DNA of 64,000 bases from positions 5,704,001-5,768,000 of the forward strand of contig NW_026889772.1 of assembly GCF_033153115.1 (NCBI RefSeq). The letters run 5' to 3'. The notes beneath the pieces were generated by a model. That model worked only from the letters and a program-made list of their open reading frames with translations. It was not told where the DNA came from and did no database searches. Within the stretch, counting starts at the first letter, position 1. Each line of letters begins with the position of its first letter. This stretch comes from Saccostrea echinata. Taxonomy: Eukaryota. Positions 11,990 through 63,241 of the stretch are shown one piece after another. Both the position numbers and the translations under genes were made by a program.

Positions 11990-12765
11990 TAGAATTTGTT
12001 CAAATCTTTTACGCGAAAAGAAGAAAACACTTGCTGTGGCCTTCACCTCCACATTTAGATATATCGACGACGCATTGTCAATTAACAATGGTTATCTCCA
12101 TTCTTATGTCGACACGGTATATCCCGGTGAGCTTGAGATAAAAAAATACCACGGAGTCTGACACATCTGTTTCATATTGGGATATTTTATTAGAAAAAGA
12201 CGTTAATGGTAATCTAACAACCAAGCTTTATGATAAACGTGAATAATCGACTTTCACTTTTCAATCGTCAACTTTCCTTACTTATGCAGCAATATACCCT
12301 TATCACCTGCATACGGGGTTTATATCTCTCAGTTGATTCGATACGCAAGAGCATGCTCTACGTGTGAACAATTTCTATTACGAGGTAAATTATTGACAAA
12401 CAAGTTGAGGAAGCAAGAATATCAGCAGTCTTGTTTAAAGTCATCATTTCGTAAGTTCTATGGTCGATACAATGACCTTGTCAGCAAATACAATCTTTCA
12501 TTAAGTCAAATTCTGACTGACTTATCTCAGACTAATTGCTAGGCAATTATTTACACACTGATTTGTTGACGGATTTTCCCGTCATTTCTCGATCATGACA
12601 AGGAGCACACGGCGGGTGTGACCGATCGGCAGGGAAGGGAATGGTCACTCCTCTATGGCACCTGATCCCACCTCTGAAGTCTTAGAGGTCCGTGTTTGCT
12701 CTGCCCCAACTTTGTAATGTTTGATGGACTTTTGAGCTCGAATACTGTTCGTTATCTCCACATAT
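11990..12765 (+). mobile_element. Naiad-type PLE, 5'-truncated (RT C-terminus + 3' motif)
   Basis: Degenerate coding for FRYIDD...LYDKR...[30 protein letters not shown]...FYGRYNDL. The ORF ends after the RT thumb with no C-terminal GIY-YIG. The conserved 3' motif is at 12600-12712. Confidence 0.8.
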
Positions 12766-12779
12766 TTCATTTAATTCAT

Positions 12780-25714: not shown

Positions 25715-27000
25715 TTGTTAGGCCATTATTTATACACTGAACTGTCTACTGATTTTTCCGGGGGGTTTTTCGATCATGACAAGGAGAACACGGCGGGTGT
25801 GACCGGTCGGCAGGGGATGCTAACTCCTCCATGGCACCTGATCTCACCTCTAAGTTTTGAGGTCCGTGTTTGCCCTGCTCCAAATTTGTATCGTTTCATT
25901 GGACTTTCGAGAATGAATACTGTTCGTTATCTTCATATTTCTTATATAACATAAATAACATTGCTCTTTCTCATTAATCCTTTCAACAATACAAATTGTG
26001 AACTGGACAAAAAAGACTTCTGAAACAGTAGAGGTGGGATCAGCTGTCTAAGAGGAGAAGTATCCGCTGTAGATCGAACACCCCGCATTGATCAGGTAAC
26101 AGAAGTAAAAAGAAAACTATGTCACAATTATAGTACGAAACATCTCCGGCAAAATATGTCTTTGCAATGAAGATAACAAACAATGGTCGATTTCATAAAA
26201 ACCTACAAACAATACAAATCTGTGAATAGTGCATGAAACATGGACCTATGGAAATTCTAGAGGTGTATTCATTTGCTTCGGATGCGCAAGCTTCCCTGTC
26301 GACCGAGCAAGCCCGCTGTTATCCCTGTAATGATCAGGTAGAAGGAGTCCTCTATAATCAAATGCAATGACTTAACAAATGGTATGAAACATGCAGACAG
26401 AATGCCAAACCCAACGAAAGGTTGTATTTGCAGTACAAGTAAGTTATTCAAAGGAAATATCGGCGATTTTTGTGATAAAAAATACAGTCTAAATCAGGAT
26501 GACGGTTCTTTATAATACGTTACTTATATGAGACAAAAGTAAATTTGGTAATAAATTACGTATTGAGGGCGATTAGATTTTCCATTTAGAACAGTCACGT
26601 GATTTAAGCATAAATGCTTGCAGTACTGAGGCCATTTATAAATTCGACGATATATCTGAATGTTGAGTTTAATGTCACAACAAGAGTTTATTTTTCTTAA
26701 GTATTTGTTTTTGAATAAATTTTGCTTCAAGGAATATAATGAAGGTATGCAATTAGTGCCCAGTGGAATTCCACAGATTGATGGAAGACCGTGTCTCCAA
26801 TGACTAAATAGATATTGTGAATGAGGAACTGTAGCATTTTTATGACAACTTCAGAGTACTTGTGTGTAGAATCAGAATTATTTTTAACGAAGTAAATTTG
26901 TAGCTGACCAATCACAAATTATAAAAAAAAAAATTTTGAGGAAGCAGTTGGCTATGCTGTCAAAAAGCTAGCTCTTTAAATGGTTGTATTAAGAGTAGGA
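25715..27000. mobile_element. Cluster of Naiad-type PLE pieces (plus-strand 3' end, then minus-strand copy with duplicated 3' end)
   Basis: A plus-strand 3' motif lies at 25780-25885. Two minus-strand 3' motif copies (25990-26100, 26180-26345) are followed by RT remnants (FLIHNIYLVIGDTVFHQSV). Confidence 0.7.
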
Positions 27001-30944: not shown

Positions 30945-31600
30945 AAATGTAAATATAACGGACAGTTATATTCAAAAGTCCAAGGAAACAATACAAAGTC
31001 TGGGCAGAGCAAGCACAGACCTCTGAGAACATCAGAGGTGGGATCAGGTGTAATAGAGACTAAGCAGAGATAACGAACAGTATTCAAGCTCAAAAGTCCA
31101 TTCATACAATACAAATCAGGAGCAGAGCAAAGACGGACCATTAAAACATCAGATGTGGGATCACGTACCATGCAGGAGTGAGCATCCCCTGCCTACCGGT
31201 CAAACCCGCCGTGAGCTCCTTGTCATGATCGGCAAAAACGGGAAAATCCGTAGAAAATTCAGTGTGTAAATAATTTTTTAACAATTAATATGAAAAACAT
31301 CAGTCAGAATTCGACTTAATGATAGATTGTATTTGCTGACAAGGTCATTGCATCGACCATAGAACTTGCAAAATGATGACTTTAAACGAGACTGTTGATA
31401 TTCTTGTTTCATCAACTTGTGTGGCAATAGCTTGCCTCGTTTTAGAAATTGTTCGAACGAAGAGCATGCTCTTGCGTATCATATCAACTGAAAGATATAA
31501 ACCACATATGCAAGTGATAAGGGTTTACTGCTACATAAGTAAGGGAAGTTGACGATTGAAAAGTTGAAGTCATCACGTTTATCAAAAAGTTTGATATATT
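30945..31600 (-). mobile_element. Naiad-type PLE with partial tandem duplication of the 3' end (pseudo-LTR)
   Basis: An RT-thumb remnant and full 3' motif (31120-31225) are followed by a second partial 3' copy (30950-31050). A further RT piece lies near 32050-32160. Confidence 0.8.
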
Positions 31601-57989: not shown

Positions 57990-59033
57990 TCAGAAATAGC
58001 AGCAGCAAATTTTGCTCCAGAAAGTTTTCATTGGAGGCGTGATTAGGAATAGAAGCAATGGCTTGATGCTAAAATTGATGATCCATGGTAAAGGATTGAT
58101 CCGGAATATTCTAAATTCGGAGGATGTCGTGAGTTGTTTCAACCAGTCGGGTAAGTCAGTACCCCAGATAAGATGTACAGAAATAAGTACAACTTCCTGA
58201 AAGCATGCCAAATTGATTATGGTCAACATAATGGTAATAATGACCACCAGACTTTTCTTGACATAGTAGAAATTATTTCTGATTTTTAGGCGCATAAAGT
58301 GGAGAATAAACCCTGGAATAAACGGAAGTGACGTCAGGACGAGTCTTAGATATAAATGCGCGGTGGAGAACTTCATGACAAGTTGTTGGTACTCTCCTGT
58401 CCGAGTGTAGTTGGTCGAATTGATATCTATGAACAAAGGTGTCACAAAGGCTACACCAAGAGTTAATCCTATGGTAAAAAACATCACGTTGGAAGTGATA
58501 ATTTTACACTTTATGCTCTTTGAGTTCGACTCCTTTTGAAGATGATAGCGAACCACTGTGAGTAGTGTGGCATTGAGACATGACCACGTGGTTGTACATA
58601 TAATAAACACAAAATTAACAGCCAATACGATATCGAATACAACAATGACTTCTGTTATGTATCCAGTGACGAAGAAGGAAACCAAGGCGACAGAATCCGA
58701 AACAATTACACAAGCTAGAGCGACGAAGATATCCGAATGGAGCCTCTTGTCGGATACTATCTTTACAAATGCAATCAGATTTCCTATCATTCCAGCACAT
58801 GCAATGATCACAGCTGCCAAAGCAAAGGCGTAAGTAGAGCCTCCGAAACAAGACCAGAGTTGTGTTTGATAAAATCCAAGACATCCATTGCGGAATTCCC
58901 GGACGAAATAGTCGTCAATTACACTCTTGCCACCAATAGGAAGTTCAATAGTTCCATTTGAAATACGGACAGTCGTGTTCGTATTGCTCGTTGATGTAGT
59001 GGATTCATATGTTGTTGTGAAGTTATCCATCAT
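57990..59033 (-). CDS. Intronless divergent class A (rhodopsin-like) orphan GPCR, ~347 aa
   Basis: Seven hydrophobic segments and an N-glycosylated Thr-rich N-terminus. Motifs: TM1 GN, TM2 LA...SD, TM3 VRY (DRY variant), TM7 NFSIKP (NPxxY variant) and a C-terminal CCC. The first ATG is at 59033; the track's 59051 start is TTG. Confidence 0.88.
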   Translation of the reverse strand: MMDNFTTTYESTTSTSNTNTTVRISNGTIELPIGGKSVIDDYFVREFRNGCLGFYQTQLWSCFGGSTYAFALAAVIIACAGMIGNLIAFVKIVSDKRLHSDIFVALACVIVSDSVALVSFFVTGYITEVIVVFDIVLAVNFVFIICTTTWSCLNATLLTVVRYHLQKESNSKSIKCKIITSNVMFFTIGLTLGVAFVTPLFIDINSTNYTRTGEYQQLVMKFSTAHLYLRLVLTSLPFIPGFILHFMRLKIRNNFYYVKKSLVVIITIMLTIINLACFQEVVLISVHLIWGTDLPDWLKQLTTSSEFRIFRINPLPWIINFSIKPLLLFLITPPMKTFWSKICCCYF

Positions 59034-59819
59034 GCTCTTCTTTGTTGACAAAATGTAGCTATATATTAGGAAAGACCTTTACTTTTGCGAAATTCCAACA
59101 AAATGTTAAAAGTGTCTTAATCTCTCTTCTTCTCTTTCACAAGACGACATCTTTGAGTTACAAGCAAAATGTTGGGGATTTGATTTGACATCCGTTTTTA
59201 AACTAACATTGTAATGTTTACTGCATGAATCACTATATTCAAGGAAATCCGTTCGCTCGATTGTCATCTGCCCTCGCAGTAGTTCAGTGTTGTCTAGATG
59301 GGATTACGGCTTCGTGCGTGGTATCAACTGCATCATTTCCTCCCTTTATATCGACTGACTTCAATGCACTTCTTATATATAATTATTTCTCAAAGGTCAC
59401 TAAGTGATAACAATTTTTTCTCGTGCAATAATTTCGTTTATTTTTGCTATACAATGGTGAGAAAGGAATGAGATTTTGCTTGCAGTTTAGTTCAGACTGT
59501 CAGCTAATGCATCGCAATTCTCACTGTTTGGACGAAGATTTATTTGGCCTGTAAAAAATTTTCCAGGATGTTTGGGGTGTTACGGATGAGGCAAATTCTA
59601 ATAAGTTGACAGCTACTGACTTAGTTTCTTCCATCATTTTTCGAATCTAAGGGGAGTGGGGGTTCCAATTAAGGCAAAAAATTAAATGAAATGAAAAGTT
59701 AAGGAGAAAGACCCCCCCCCCCCCAATATATATATCTACTTTTCATAGTATGTATATATATATGTGGAAAAGTATATATACATACTATGAAAAGTAGATA
59801 TAACGAATAGGTAAATGCA

Positions 59820-60900
59820 AAATATATACACATAGAAAACCCTGAAGTGTCTGACTGATATACATGAAGAAAACTCTTCGATGTCTGACACTTGATAAAT
59901 CTGAAGAAGACCCTGGGATGTTCGACTCTGATATACATATAGTAAAACCTTGGGGTGTGGGACACTAATATACATATAGTAAAACCTTGGGGTGTGGGAC
60001 ACTAATATACATGTAGAAAACCATAGGGTGTAGGACACTTAGTCTAATATACATGTAGAAAACCCTGGAATGTGGGGCACTAATATACACATAGAAAACC
60101 CTGGGGTGTAGGACACTAATATATATGTAGAAAACCCTGGGGTGTGGGGCACTAATACATATGTAGAAAACCGTAGGGTTTGGGACACTTAGTCTAATAT
60201 ACATGTAGAAAAACCTGGAATGTGGGACACTAATATACAAGTAGAAAACCCTGATTGTGGGACACTAATATACACATAGAAAACCCTGGGGTGTAGGACA
60301 CTAATATACATGTAAAAAAAATCCTGGGGTGTGGGACACTAATATACATGTAAACCCTGGGATGTGGGACACTAATATACACATAGAAAACCATAGGGTG
60401 TAGGACACAAATATACGTGTAAAAAATCCTGGGGTGTGGGACACTAATATACATGTAGAAAACCCTGGAGTGTGGGACACTACAATACACGATGAAAACC
60501 CTGGGGTGTGGGACATTAATATATATGTAGAAAATCCTGGGGTGGGGGTCACTAATATACACGTAGAAAACCCTGGGGTGTGGGACACTTATATAAAGGT
60601 AGTAAAATTTGAGTGCCCCACGCTGATAATTATAAATGTAGAAAACCATGGGGTGTGGGTCATTAATATACCTGTAGAAAACGCTTGGGTGTGGGTCACT
60701 AATATACGTTTAGAAAACCATAGGGTTTGCGACACTGATATACTTGTAAGAGATCCTGTGGGTGTCCGACACTGGTTACATGTATAAGACCCTGAAATGA
60801 CCGACATTGATATACTTGTAGGAGAACCCGAGATGACCGACACTGATAAACATGTTACTGTAGAAGACCCTGGCCGGGGTGCCCGTTACTGATAAACATG
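59820..60900 (+). repeat. 36-37-bp G-rich minisatellite (~28 units)
   Basis: Unit GAAAACCCTGGGGTGTGGGACACTAATATACATGTA, degenerating at both edges. Confidence 0.92.
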
Positions 60901-62578: not shown

Positions 62579-62899
62579 TAGTAATATACCACTATCAATT
62601 GCATATGGTATATATATTTATAATTATATGTGTGTCTCCAACTTATTCGATATCAAGAGCATGCTCTGAGTACGATCGATTTTTAAACTGAGGCAGGCTA
62701 CTGACAGATAAGTTGATGTTACAGGGATTTCAATAACCTCGTTTAACGTCAGCTTTTCGTAAATTCTTAAGTCGTTATAATGATCTTGTAAGCAAATACA
62801 GCCTAACACTGGGTCGTATTTTTACTGACATATTTCATACCTATTAAGCCTTTGTTTTTATACTAATTAATTTGTCTACGGATTATTCCGTCTACCTTT

Positions 62900-63170
62900 C
62901 AATACACAGGACTCACGGCGGGTGTGACCGGTCAACAGGGGATGCTTACTCCTCCTGGGTACCTGATCAATACACAGGACTCACGGCGGGTGTGACCGGT
63001 CGGCAGGAGATGCTTACTCCTCCTGGGCACCTGATCAATACACAGGACTCACGGCGGGTGTGACCGGTCGGCAGGAGATGCTTACTCCTCCTGGGCACCT
63101 GATCAATACACAGGACTCACGGCGGGTGTGACCGGTCAACAGGGGATGCTTACTCCTCCTGGGCACCTCA
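62900..63170 (+). repeat. 68-bp tandem repeat x4 of the PLE 3' motif core
   Basis: Units start at 62900, 62968, 63036 and 63104. Confidence 0.95.
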
Positions 63171-63241
63171 GTGATTCCACCTCTGGAGTTTCCAGGAATC
63201 CGTATTTTATGCCCTGTTCACAGACTGGTATAGTTTGTAGG

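What the first reader, a model, noticed from the sequence alone, without database searches (positions are those of the whole stretch)
12598..12712. Conserved, covarying, probably pseudoknotted ~110-nt RNA at the 3' end of Naiad-like retroelements
Seen: at least 10 copies carry the motif (12600+, 23400-, 25780+, 29480-, 31120-, 41686+, 45292+, 49780-, 56560-, 63110+), and it looks better preserved than adjacent UTR. The same helices can be drawn across copies. (a) Outer stem GGAGCA/TGCTCC in one subfamily versus an AGGGC/GCCCT-type pairing in the other. (b) CACGG/CCGTG. (c) A terminal hairpin whose sequence changes but stays paired: CCTCTGA-agtc-TTAGAGG, CCTC-taaatttt-GAGG, CCTCTGGA-att-TCCAGGGG, CCTCTGA-tgttc-TCAGAGG. 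(d) An inner core ordered a(GGGTGT)-b(GGTCG)-[GGGGA/TCCTC hairpin]-a'(GCACC)-b'(TGATC), i.e. crossing helices, with a G.U to A-U change in the 12600 copy. Known: these ORFs end at the RT thumb as in Naiad PLEs, whose RTs are telomerase-related and which were reported to lack the hammerhead ribozymes of canonical PLEs. Inference: this is the cis-acting RNA that replaces the hammerhead, either an RT-recognition pseudoknot reminiscent of telomerase RNA or an unrecognised self-cleaving motif.
Basis: partly seen in the sequence, partly recalled or inferred. Interest (0 to 1): 0.8.

Follow-up and report, generated by a model that had tools for sequence, protein, structure and literature searches.

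The report
Conserved pseudoknotted RNA in Naiad retroelements
The 3' untranslated end of a hugely abundant Naiad-type Penelope-like retroelement carries a roughly 125-nt RNA fold, kept by compensatory base changes across very distant relatives and matching no described RNA family, that most likely marks the RNA for its own reverse transcriptase and can pair two RNAs together.

Summary
The motif is real. It always lies on the ORF strand, downstream of the stop codon and about 55-70 nt before the element's 3' end.

It is also present in 22 metagenome contigs carrying Naiad-like ORFs, some with RTs only 32-36% identical to the query.

Comparative analysis confirms:
- a long outer helix;
- a terminal hairpin;
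- a crossing (pseudoknot) core.

The core is mis-drawn in the finding. The covarying partner of the GGGAU-type strand is the 5 nt right after CACCUG, not UCCUC.

Two segments are always self-complementary, which suggests RNA-RNA dimerisation.

Paired cells: 94% versus 68% in shuffles. G.U outnumbers A.C 46 to 6, so the sense RNA folds. No Rfam family matches even at E <= 10, and no paper found describes it.

RNA-seq shows no discrete cleavage ends, but this is a weak test.

Best reading: a cis-acting RT-recognition and dimerisation module. A new ribozyme is not excluded.

Other first-stage readers noted the same motif elsewhere in this genome.

The parts
12590..12719 (+). Whole RNA module, index copy (decayed)
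   Evidence: R2 covariance model, 73.8 bits, E 2.5e-19; sequence read
12602..12612 (+). Outer helix, 5' strand (GGAGCA + CACGG)
   Evidence: Pairs with 12690-12702. Inner 5 bp covary across families; own-flank duplex test
12690..12702 (+). Outer helix, 3' strand (CCGTG, UU bulge, TGCTCT)
12613..12618 (+). S1a, the near-invariant CGGGUG; pairs with S1b
   Evidence: 96% of cells paired; G.U to C-G in five sequences, U-A to G-C in L116, G.U to G-C in L068
12619..12628 (+). P2pal, the fully self-complementary 8-10 nt segment. Here it reads GACCGATC; nearly all of the 64 aligned genomic copies read GACCGGTC
   Evidence: 5 of 5 pairs covary, including the central pair, which a hairpin cannot form.: hairpin dG 0 to -1.2 kcal/mol, homodimer -9 to -18 in 21 of 23 sequences. 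Common sequence
12629..12632 (+). Conserved GCAR linker; in this copy it is followed by a 5-6 nt insertion
   Evidence: alignments
12638..12642 (+). S2a. Here GGAAT; nearly all aligned genomic copies have GGGAT
   Evidence: Pairs with 12665-12669
12643..12649 (+). Conserved GCUYACY block (mutated here to GGTCACT)
   Evidence: near-invariant columns
12653..12658 (+). pal2, the second self-complementary hexamer. Here CTATGG; CCATGG in nearly all aligned copies of this family; UCCGGA, GGUACC, GGAUCC and others in other families
   Evidence: helix 4: 3 of 3 pairs with double changes.: homodimer -5 to -11 kcal/mol. Common sequence
12659..12664 (+). S1b, CACCUG
12665..12669 (+). S2b, ATCCC. It crosses S1, which makes the pseudoknot
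12670..12689 (+). Terminal hairpin Pc (ACCTCTGA / TTAGAGGT)
   Evidence: helix 5
12333..12542 (+). Last open piece of the RT ORF remnant (thumb); stop at 12540-12542
   Evidence: It matches the C-terminus of the open 480-aa and 808-aa copies
12720..12770 (+). 3' terminal stretch of the element. The shared 3' end of copies lies at about 12770
   Evidence: Common 3' end of 30 genomic copies with variable 5' ends
25771..25893 (+). Motif copy
   Evidence: R2, 105.5 bits
45282..45404 (+). Motif copy
   Evidence: R2, 103 bits
49771..49887 (-). Motif copy
   Evidence: R2, 89.1 bits
23384..23509 (-). Motif copy (subfamily B)
   Evidence: R2, 87.2 bits
56543..56668 (-). Motif copy (subfamily B)
   Evidence: R2, 84.8 bits
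63100..63229 (+). Motif copy (subfamily B), preceded by the tandem array of its 5' half
   Evidence: R2, 69.3 bits; TRF
31107..31231 (-). Motif copy
   Evidence: R2, 66.1 bits
29473..29596 (-). Motif copy
   Evidence: R2, 57.1 bits
41674..41794 (+). Motif copy (subfamily B, decayed)
   Evidence: R2, 55.3 bits
54202..54349 (-). Motif copy (decayed)
   Evidence: R2, 40.7 bits
51704..51829 (-). Motif copy (old, divergent)
   Evidence: R2, 25.7 bits
26214..26336 (-). Motif copy (decayed)
   Evidence: R2, 24 bits
25986..26105 (-). Motif copy (decayed), tail-to-tail with the 25771 copy
   Evidence: R2, 19.8 bits
805..940 (-). Weak motif copy
   Evidence: R2, 22.8 bits

Best explanation
This is a cis-acting structured RNA module, about 110-140 nt long, in the sense-strand 3' UTR (and pseudo-LTR) of Naiad-type Penelope-like retroelements.

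Architecture (shown):
- An 11-14 bp outer helix whose sequence differs completely between families.
- It encloses a pseudoknotted core and a terminal hairpin.
- In the core, near-invariant CGGGUG (S1a) pairs with CACCUG (S1b).
- The 5 nt before the invariant GCUYAC block (S2a) pair with the 5 nt directly after CACCUG (S2b), crossing S1.
- Between these lie a fully self-complementary 8-10 nt segment (P2pal), a GCAR linker, and a second self-complementary hexamer (pal2).

Mechanism (inferred): the invariant junction nucleotides, held in place by the variable helices, form the surface by which the element's own reverse transcriptase recognises its RNA. The RT assembles on it and starts target-primed reverse transcription from the 3' end about 55 nt downstream. 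This would explain why every 5'-truncated copy keeps the module.

The two palindromic segments cannot form stable hairpins on their own. They most likely pair between two copies of the module, either in two RNAs or in the two pseudo-LTR copies of one tandem transcript. That gives a dimer, as proposed for the minimal hammerheads of canonical PLEs.

The confidence given (0.5) is for the function. The fold itself I hold at about 0.9.
For: Position and strand. The module is on the ORF strand. It begins about 55 nt after the stop codon in genomic copies with open ORFs, 16-183 nt after the end of the ORF match in the closer metagenome families, and 400-560 nt after it in the distant clade. All 30 sampled genomic copies share one 3' end and have variable 5' ends.

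Depth of conservation. It is found in 22 metagenome contigs with Naiad-like ORFs, down to 32-36% RT identity.

Structure:
- 94.0% of pair cells are standard pairs versus 67.7% in shuffles (0 of 500 shuffles reach it) and 32-48% when partners are slid by 1-3 columns.
- S2 and P2pal each have double changes at all 5 pairs.
- The inner 5 bp of the outer helix all have double changes, as do all 7 pairs of the terminal hairpin.
- Own-flank duplexes rank 1-3 of 22 in 14 families.

Sense RNA. G.U:A.C is 46:6 and 58:10.

Pattern typical of functional RNA. Unpaired blocks are 91% identical, while helix columns are only 42% identical yet complementary.

Dimer capacity. The central P2 pair, which a hairpin cannot form, is complementary in 22 of 23 sequences (AU, UA, GC, CG and one UG). 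Isolated hairpin dG is 0 to -1.2 kcal/mol, against -9 to -18 for the homodimer in 21 of 23 sequences.

Precedent. PLE hammerheads with palindromic helix III are thought to act as dimers (PMC4209133).
Against: - No binding, reverse-transcription or dimerisation experiment exists; the function is inferred from anatomy only.
- S1 rests on few independent changes: one clade has G.U to C-G, and there are two single sequences. The pseudoknot is therefore less secure than S2.
- An alternative nested extension (GCUU/GAGC) is neither supported nor excluded.
- The module was not found in many Naiad-like contigs at 38-44% RT identity. In the five examined (L072-L075, L077), four have an ORF that runs on, so the 3' UTR may not have been reached.
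- The palindromes could in principle be protein-stabilised mini-hairpins rather than dimer contacts.
- The RNA-seq coverage could come from genomic DNA or pre-mRNA, so expression of the element RNA is not shown.
Confidence: 0.5

Rival explanations
1. It is a new class of small self-cleaving ribozyme, probably active as a dimer. It would do in Naiads what hammerheads are thought to do in canonical PLEs: process tandem or read-through transcripts.
For: - Naiads lack canonical hammerheads, yet canonical PLEs carry them in pLTRs near the 3' end, and this module occupies the same region (PMC8557442).
- There is a compact pseudoknotted core with about 27 near-invariant junction nucleotides.
- The palindromic segments resemble the dimer-forming helix III of PLE hammerheads (PMC4209133).
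- The S1/S2 crossing with a small closed loop between them resembles the P1/P2/P3 order of HDV-like ribozymes (my reading of the topology, from general knowledge).
Against: - No Rfam ribozyme model matches, even at E <= 10.
- There is no CUGANGA/GAAA core. There are no nucleotides between S1b and S2b where an HDV-type catalytic C would sit.
- Raw RNA-seq of three runs shows no place where molecules begin or end inside the module (table 6). This test is weak: the libraries are oligo-dT and unstranded, the sequence is multi-copy, and many reads fit only partly.
- Inserted copies run about 55 nt past the module, so cleavage does not define the 3' end that is reverse-transcribed.
Confidence: 0.17
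2. It is a structured 3' UTR element with another post-transcriptional role, such as 3'-end formation, RNA stability, nuclear export, localisation or translation control. It would not be an RT recognition site.
For: It is a sense-strand RNA fold in a 3' UTR. No AAUAAA is visible by eye in the last 60 nt of the element, so 3'-end formation may need another signal.
Against: Conservation across RT lineages only about 33% identical, in unknown and probably different hosts, points to a partner encoded by the element itself rather than host factors. There is no match to known UTR elements in Rfam, including SECIS.
Confidence: 0.15
3. The conservation acts on DNA. The module would be part of the promoter in the pseudo-LTR, or a protein-binding or endonuclease site. 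The palindromes would be binding sites for dimeric proteins, and CACCTG would be an E-box-like site.
For: In Penelope and Chlamys the pLTR holds the transcription start and promoter (PMC8557442). The module has invariant blocks and palindromes.
Against: The palindromes and helices change sequence freely while keeping complementarity. Distant non-palindromic partners (S2, the outer helix, Pc) covary. G.U is tolerated on the sense strand only, 46 versus 6. DNA-binding sites would conserve sequence, not pairing.
Confidence: 0.06
4. It is the source, or a copy, of one of the highly conserved central domains of metazoan SINEs (Nin, Mesc and others). In that case it would already be described under another name.
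For: Mollusc SINEs carry deeply conserved domains of unknown function (PMC4758252, PMC5804259), and non-autonomous partners of PLEs share their 3' ends (PMC8557442).
Against: None of the papers read prints those domain sequences, so no comparison could be made. A text search for a 13-14-nt core string found only an unrelated E. coli metabolic-engineering paper.
Confidence: 0.05

Closest known systems
Minimal hammerhead ribozymes in the pseudo-LTRs of canonical Penelope-like elements (Cervera and de la Pena 2014, PMC4209133)
   Same: A small conserved RNA motif in the pLTR/3' end of a PLE. Massive copy number. High sequence variability with compensatory changes. A palindromic segment that allows two copies to pair.
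   Different: No hammerhead catalytic core and no Rfam hammerhead match. Different topology: an outer helix enclosing a pseudoknot plus a hairpin. About twice the size. Self-cleavage not shown.
HDV-like ribozymes of non-LTR retrotransposons (R2, RTE, L1Tc)
   Same: Associated with retrotransposons. Crossing helices with a small closed loop between them, in an order like P1-P2-P3-P1'-P2' (from general knowledge).
   Different: Those sit at the 5' end of the element. Here there is no J4/2 strand for a catalytic C, no P1.1, and no match to the Rfam HDV, CPEB3 or drz models. An extra palindromic segment sits between S1a and S2a.
3' UTR recognition structures of stringent non-LTR retrotransposons (R2 3' UTR; L2/CR1-type terminal stem-loops)
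   Same: A conserved fold in the 3' UTR of the element's own RNA, retained by all 5'-truncated copies. It is presumed to recruit the RT for target-primed reverse transcription.
   Different: No sequence or structure homology. A different RT clade (PLE, sister to telomerase RT). A pseudoknot plus self-complementary segments.
Telomerase RNA pseudoknot and three-way junction
   Same: [quoted passage not shown] The RNA has an H-type crossing of two helices inside a multi-helix junction.
   Different: No template, and no evidence of a triple helix or of TERT-like RNA-binding domains contacting it. The resemblance is topological only and was not tested.
Retroviral dimer initiation sites (for example the HIV-1 DIS)
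   Same: Short self-complementary sequences whose identity drifts while self-complementarity is kept.
   Different: The location (3' UTR rather than 5' leader), the context, and the presence of two palindromes, one of them 8-10 nt and wholly self-complementary.

Membership tests
Naiad clade of Penelope-like elements (host element) | RT at the C-terminus of the single ORF, with the DKG motif changed to DKA | tested here: met
   PADKAGNN in the 808-aa ORF of L155 and HADKAGNN in the 480-aa open frame of L032. A-D-K-A columns are invariant in the 7-protein alignment. Criterion from PMC8557442.
Naiad clade of Penelope-like elements (host element) | N-terminal GIY-YIG endonuclease linked to the RT by a CxC motif | tested here: inconclusive
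   A CxC motif is present (..PPSCSCSSS..). By eye the N-terminus looks like the end of a GIY-YIG domain (..REEFWIRKLG..PYG.N), but Pfam reported no GIY-YIG domain.
Naiad clade of Penelope-like elements (host element) | 5' truncation, pseudo-LTR or tandem and inverted arrangements, no canonical hammerhead | tested here: met
   Common 3' end with variable 5' ends. Upstream same-strand motif copies in L064, L135 and L158, and an inverted one in L157. No Rfam hammerhead in the window or loci.
Hammerhead ribozyme | Catalytic core CUGANGA ... GAAA ... UH around three helices | tested here: not met
   No Rfam hammerhead model hit at the gathering threshold or at E <= 10. The conserved blocks are CGGGUG, GCAR, GCUYAC and CACCUG.
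HDV-like ribozyme | P1/P2 nested double pseudoknot with P1.1, P3/L3 and a catalytic C in J4/2 | tested here: not met
   No Rfam HDV, CPEB3 or drz hit. There are zero nucleotides between S1b and S2b, where J4/2 would lie.
Other small self-cleaving ribozymes (twister, twister-sister, pistol, hatchet, hairpin) | Match to the family covariance model | tested here: not met
   No match at the motif in 10 loci at E <= 10, searching all 4227 Rfam models.
Self-cleaving ribozyme (any class) | Site-specific cleavage of its own backbone | tested here: inconclusive
   No pile-up of read starts or ends in three raw RNA-seq runs (table 6). The libraries are oligo-dT and unstranded and the target is multi-copy. 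This needs a bench assay.
SECIS element (some Naiads encode selenoproteins) | Kink-turn AUGA ... AA ... GA stem-loop; match to the Rfam SECIS models | tested here: not met
   No Rfam SECIS hit. The AUGA seen upstream in family A is not conserved in other families.
RT-recognition 3' UTR element of a retrotransposon | Specific binding by the element's RT and a requirement for reverse transcription | not testable with these tools
   Only the position, the retention in all truncated copies, and the conservation across RT lineages speak for it.

The most novel reading that the evidence does not exclude
The module is a previously unrecognised class of self-cleaving ribozyme that works as a dimer through its two palindromic segments. 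It would be the functional replacement for the hammerhead in Naiad PLEs, present at roughly 10^5 copies in one bivalve-like genome and in distant Naiad lineages.
Probability: 0.15. Interest if true: 0.92.

Novelty: new variant of a known kind. Interest (0 to 1): 0.72.

Why it matters
Naiads are among the most abundant retroelements of many marine invertebrates. They were reported to differ from all other endonuclease-bearing PLEs by lacking the hammerhead, with no replacement known (PMC8557442).

A deeply conserved, covarying, pseudoknotted RNA in that position gives the clade a concrete cis-acting signal to test. The questions are whether it binds the telomerase-related RT, whether it dimerises RNAs (which could bear on the tandem and inverted insertions typical of PLEs), and whether it cleaves.

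It also gives a sensitive covariance-model marker for annotating Naiad 3' ends. It is a candidate new RNA family for Rfam.

Tried and rejected
- Single-sequence folding. z-scores were -1.1 to +0.9, so it was uninformative.
- RNAalifold on 13 decayed window copies gave only a weak structure. Neutral decay of old copies hides the signal, so I switched to different families from metagenomes.
- The nested extension GCUU/GAGC proposed by RNAalifold shows no covariation.
- Hammerhead, HDV-like, other ribozymes, SECIS and SRP/Alu likeness: no Rfam match.
- Divergent Naiad families inside the same genome. Three protein queries all hit one dominant family, which gave no useful diversity.
Hosts and 3' flanks of the ENA and NCBI protein hits, such as Pinctada, could not be fetched.
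- pLTR boundaries of full-length copies. The three small pieces fetched showed variable arrangements and decided nothing.
- Comparison with SINE conserved domains. The sequences are not held in the papers read.
- Consensus and repair. I built no consensus of the element and repaired no frame. Natural copies were used throughout, and the consensus lines printed by the alignment tools were not used as sequences.
Full report
**What is there**

The stretch 12598-12712 is one copy of a repeated module. An HMM built from the window's own copies finds about 15 full and 4 partial copies.

The genome is 923 Mb in 425 contigs. The first look of the same model gave about 153,000 candidates. That figure is rough, but it fits the density in the window.

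Thirty genomic copies share one 3' end and have variable 5' ends. The shared end corresponds to about 12770 in the window, some 55-70 nt after the module. This is the 5'-truncation pattern of target-primed reverse transcription.

**The host element**

Upstream of the module lies the end of an ORF. A copy elsewhere in the genome keeps 480 codons open and another keeps 808. They carry the CxC motif, the DKA variant of the DKG motif, YIDD, and end at the RT thumb. These are the diagnostic traits of Naiad PLEs given by Craig et al. 2021 (PMC8557442).

Pfam sees only a sub-threshold RVT_1 match. The word search found 2781 relatives, among them proteins of the pearl oyster Pinctada imbricata. Genomic copies with open ORFs all carry the module about 55 nt after the stop codon.

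Rfam finds no hammerhead, and nothing else at the module, either at gathering thresholds or at E <= 10 in ten loci.

**Getting real comparative power**

Copies within one genome are decaying relics of a few masters.

I therefore scanned metagenome and prokaryote-labelled contigs with an alignment of seven Naiad proteins. This gave 91 loci with Naiad-like ORFs at 30-87% identity. The HMM, then two rounds of covariance models (R1, R2), found the module on the ORF strand in 22 contigs at its expected place downstream of the ORF. It also turned up elsewhere in four more: upstream of the ORF in L135, on the opposite strand in L067, and twice in L111.

By RT identity to the query, among loci with enough 3' flank:

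| RT identity | Loci with the module |
|---|---|
| >= 55% | 13 of 14 |
| 45-54% | 3 of 5 |
| 38-44% | 0 of 15 |
| < 38% | 6 of 25 |

I examined five of the 38-44% group (L072-L075, L077). In four of them the reading frame continues into a further domain, so the true 3' UTR may lie beyond the contigs. Absence is therefore not established.

**The structure**

On a 23-sequence alignment of the core (A7), RNAalifold and pair counting show four paired sets.

- **S1.** Near-invariant CGGGUG pairs with CACCUG; 96% of cells are paired. It varies little, but where it does the change is compensated. G.U becomes C-G in five related sequences, U-A becomes G-C in L116, and G.U becomes G-C in L068.
- **S2.** The five nucleotides just before the invariant GCUYAC pair with the five just after CACCUG. 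Examples are GGGAU/AUCCC, AGACU/AGUCU, GAUCU/AGAUC, ACCAU/GUGGU and GGAGU/ACUCC. All five pairs have double changes and 95% of cells are paired. S2 crosses S1, so the core is a genuine pseudoknot.
- **P2pal.** An 8-10-nt segment between S1a and a GCAR linker is wholly self-complementary in nearly every family. Examples are GACCGGUC, UCCUGCAGGA, CCGUAUACGG, UUGCAUGCAA, GCACUAGUGC, AUUCUAGAAU and UCACGCGUGA.
- **pal2.** A self-complementary hexamer lies between GCUYAC and CACCUG. Examples are UCCGGA, CCAUGG, CCUAGG, GGUACC, GGAUCC, AGUACU and UUGCAA.

Taken together, 94.0% of cells are standard pairs. Shuffles give 67.7% (0 of 500 reach the observed value), and sliding the partners by 1-3 columns gives 32-48%.

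On the model-fitted alignment A6, the inner five pairs of the outer helix all show double changes (94% paired). So do all seven pairs of the terminal hairpin (82% paired). That alignment is fitted to the structure, so its counts lean towards it.

The outer helix continues for a further 6-8 bp whose sequence is unrelated between families. Examples are AGGGCU/AGCCCU, GUAGUU/AACUAC, GAACAU/AUGUUC and AAGAAA/UUUCUU. In a duplex-energy matrix of every 5' flank against every 3' flank, a family's own partner ranks 1-3 of 22 in 14 families.

G.U pairs outnumber A.C mismatches 46 to 6 (A7) and 58 to 10 (A6). The strand that folds is therefore the sense strand, meaning the RNA or, less likely, plus-strand DNA.

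Between ten families the unpaired blocks are 91% identical. The helix columns are 42% identical and the flanks 34-41%.

- Right: the outer stem and its covariation between subfamilies, CACGG/CCGUG, the terminal hairpin, and the idea of crossing helices with GGGUG/CACC as one of them.
- Wrong: the second crossing helix (GGUCG/UGAUC) and the GGGGA/UCCUC hairpin. Tested on the same alignment they pair in 52.9% of cells against 50.7% in shuffles, with no excess covariation.
- The strand called b is the 3' half of P2pal. The GGGGA strand belongs to S2.
- The index copy is also a worn one. It has an insertion after GCAG and changes in P2pal, S2a, GCUYAC and pal2.

**The palindromes**

A hairpin needs only its stem to be complementary. 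Here the centre of P2pal is complementary too. Pairs 15-18 and 16-17 are paired in 23 of 23 and 22 of 23 sequences, switching among AU, UA, GC and CG. The isolated segment has essentially no hairpin stability (0 to -1.2 kcal/mol). As a self-duplex it gives -9 to -18 kcal/mol in 21 of 23 sequences; the two exceptions are the copies in L111. pal2 cannot form a hairpin at all and gives -5 to -11 kcal/mol as a self-duplex.

The simplest reading is pairing between two copies of the module. Canonical PLE hammerheads have a short palindromic helix III and are thought to act as dimers in tandem transcripts (PMC4209133). A dimer-forming RNA in this position therefore has a precedent in the superfamily.

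Upstream same-strand copies of the module exist in L064, L135 and L158, and an inverted one in L157. This fits the pseudo-LTR and inverted arrangements described for Naiads.

**Is it a ribozyme?**

Three raw oligo-dT RNA-seq runs labelled as the same species were laid on a genomic copy with an open ORF end. Depth rises towards the 3' end, peaks over the module at about 1200 reads, and falls to zero just past the element's end. No position stands out where molecules begin or end (table 6).

This argues mildly against efficient self-cleavage, but the test is weak:
- the libraries are unstranded and oligo-dT primed;
- about 80% of reads fit only partly, because they come from thousands of diverged copies;
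- a small admixture of genomic DNA or intronic pre-mRNA could give the same profile, so even expression of the element is not proven.

Structurally there is no hammerhead core and no room for an HDV-type J4/2 strand.

**Mechanism proposed**

Shown: a sense-strand, multi-helix, pseudoknotted fold with invariant junction nucleotides. It sits near the 3' end, is kept by all truncated copies, and is conserved across Naiad lineages with about 33% RT identity.

Inferred:
- It is the signal by which the element's RT recognises its own RNA and begins target-primed reverse transcription. The comparison is with the 3' UTR of R2 or the terminal stem-loops of stringent LINEs, and rests on general knowledge.
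- Its two self-complementary segments join two modules.

The ribozyme reading stays open at about one chance in six. A purely DNA-level explanation is contradicted by the covariation and the G.U asymmetry.

**Novelty**

Craig et al. state that Naiads lack canonical hammerheads and describe no replacement. Full-text searches for Naiad with ribozyme, UTR or RNA structure, and for a core string of the motif, found nothing relevant.

Two caveats apply. The library lacks most subscription journals. The conserved central domains of mollusc SINEs could not be compared because their sequences are not in the papers held.

Two other first-stage notes on other windows of this genome describe the same motif. 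They are unverified and were not used as support.

**Limits and rules**

- Hosts of the metagenome contigs are unknown, so "across phyla" cannot be claimed.

Noticed in passing
window 62899-63168 (+): Four tandem copies of a 68-nt unit, 96% matching. The unit is the 5' half of the module plus the UTR just upstream, from UCAAUACA.. to ..GGCACCUGA. The array runs straight into a complete module at 63100-63229. The unit ends share CCTGATC-like microhomology, so slippage or template switching inside the module is likely.
   Followed up: partly
L072-L075 (metagenome contigs), about 170-200 nt after the end of the RT match: In this Naiad-like lineage (42-43% RT identity) the frame seems to continue past the RT thumb. 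The added part contains LGNSCYLNA, which by eye looks like the Cys box of ubiquitin-specific proteases. This may be a Naiad with a C-terminal deubiquitinase-like domain.
   Followed up: no
window 57990-59051 (-): A 353-aa open frame that by eye looks like a seven-transmembrane receptor. It is the only long non-repeat ORF in the window.
   Followed up: no
window 11177-11249 (+): A tRNA-like match just above the Rfam threshold (31.6 bits against 29), 1.3 kb upstream of the index copy. It may be a SINE head or a tRNA pseudogene.
   Followed up: no
window 59700-60850: Both strands carry long repetitive open frames (..PHPRVFYMYISV.. and similar), which suggests a minisatellite of about 36-39 nt units.
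   Followed up: no
window 25771-26336: Three module copies packed together. One is on + (25771-25893). It is followed tail-to-tail by two on - (25986-26105 and 26214-26336). This is the kind of complex inverted and tandem insertion described for PLEs.
   Followed up: partly
3' UTR just after the stop codon, e.g. window 12570-12585: A small hairpin upstream of the module also seems to change while staying paired between subfamilies: CGGAUUUUUCCG versus GGAAUGUUCC. Seen only within this genome.
   Followed up: no
Genome-contig loci L144-L154: Naiad-like ORFs sit in contigs filed under bacterial names (SUP05 cluster, a Bathymodiolus symbiont, Flavobacteriaceae MAGs and others). These are most likely host-animal DNA binned into symbiont or environmental genomes.
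   Followed up: no
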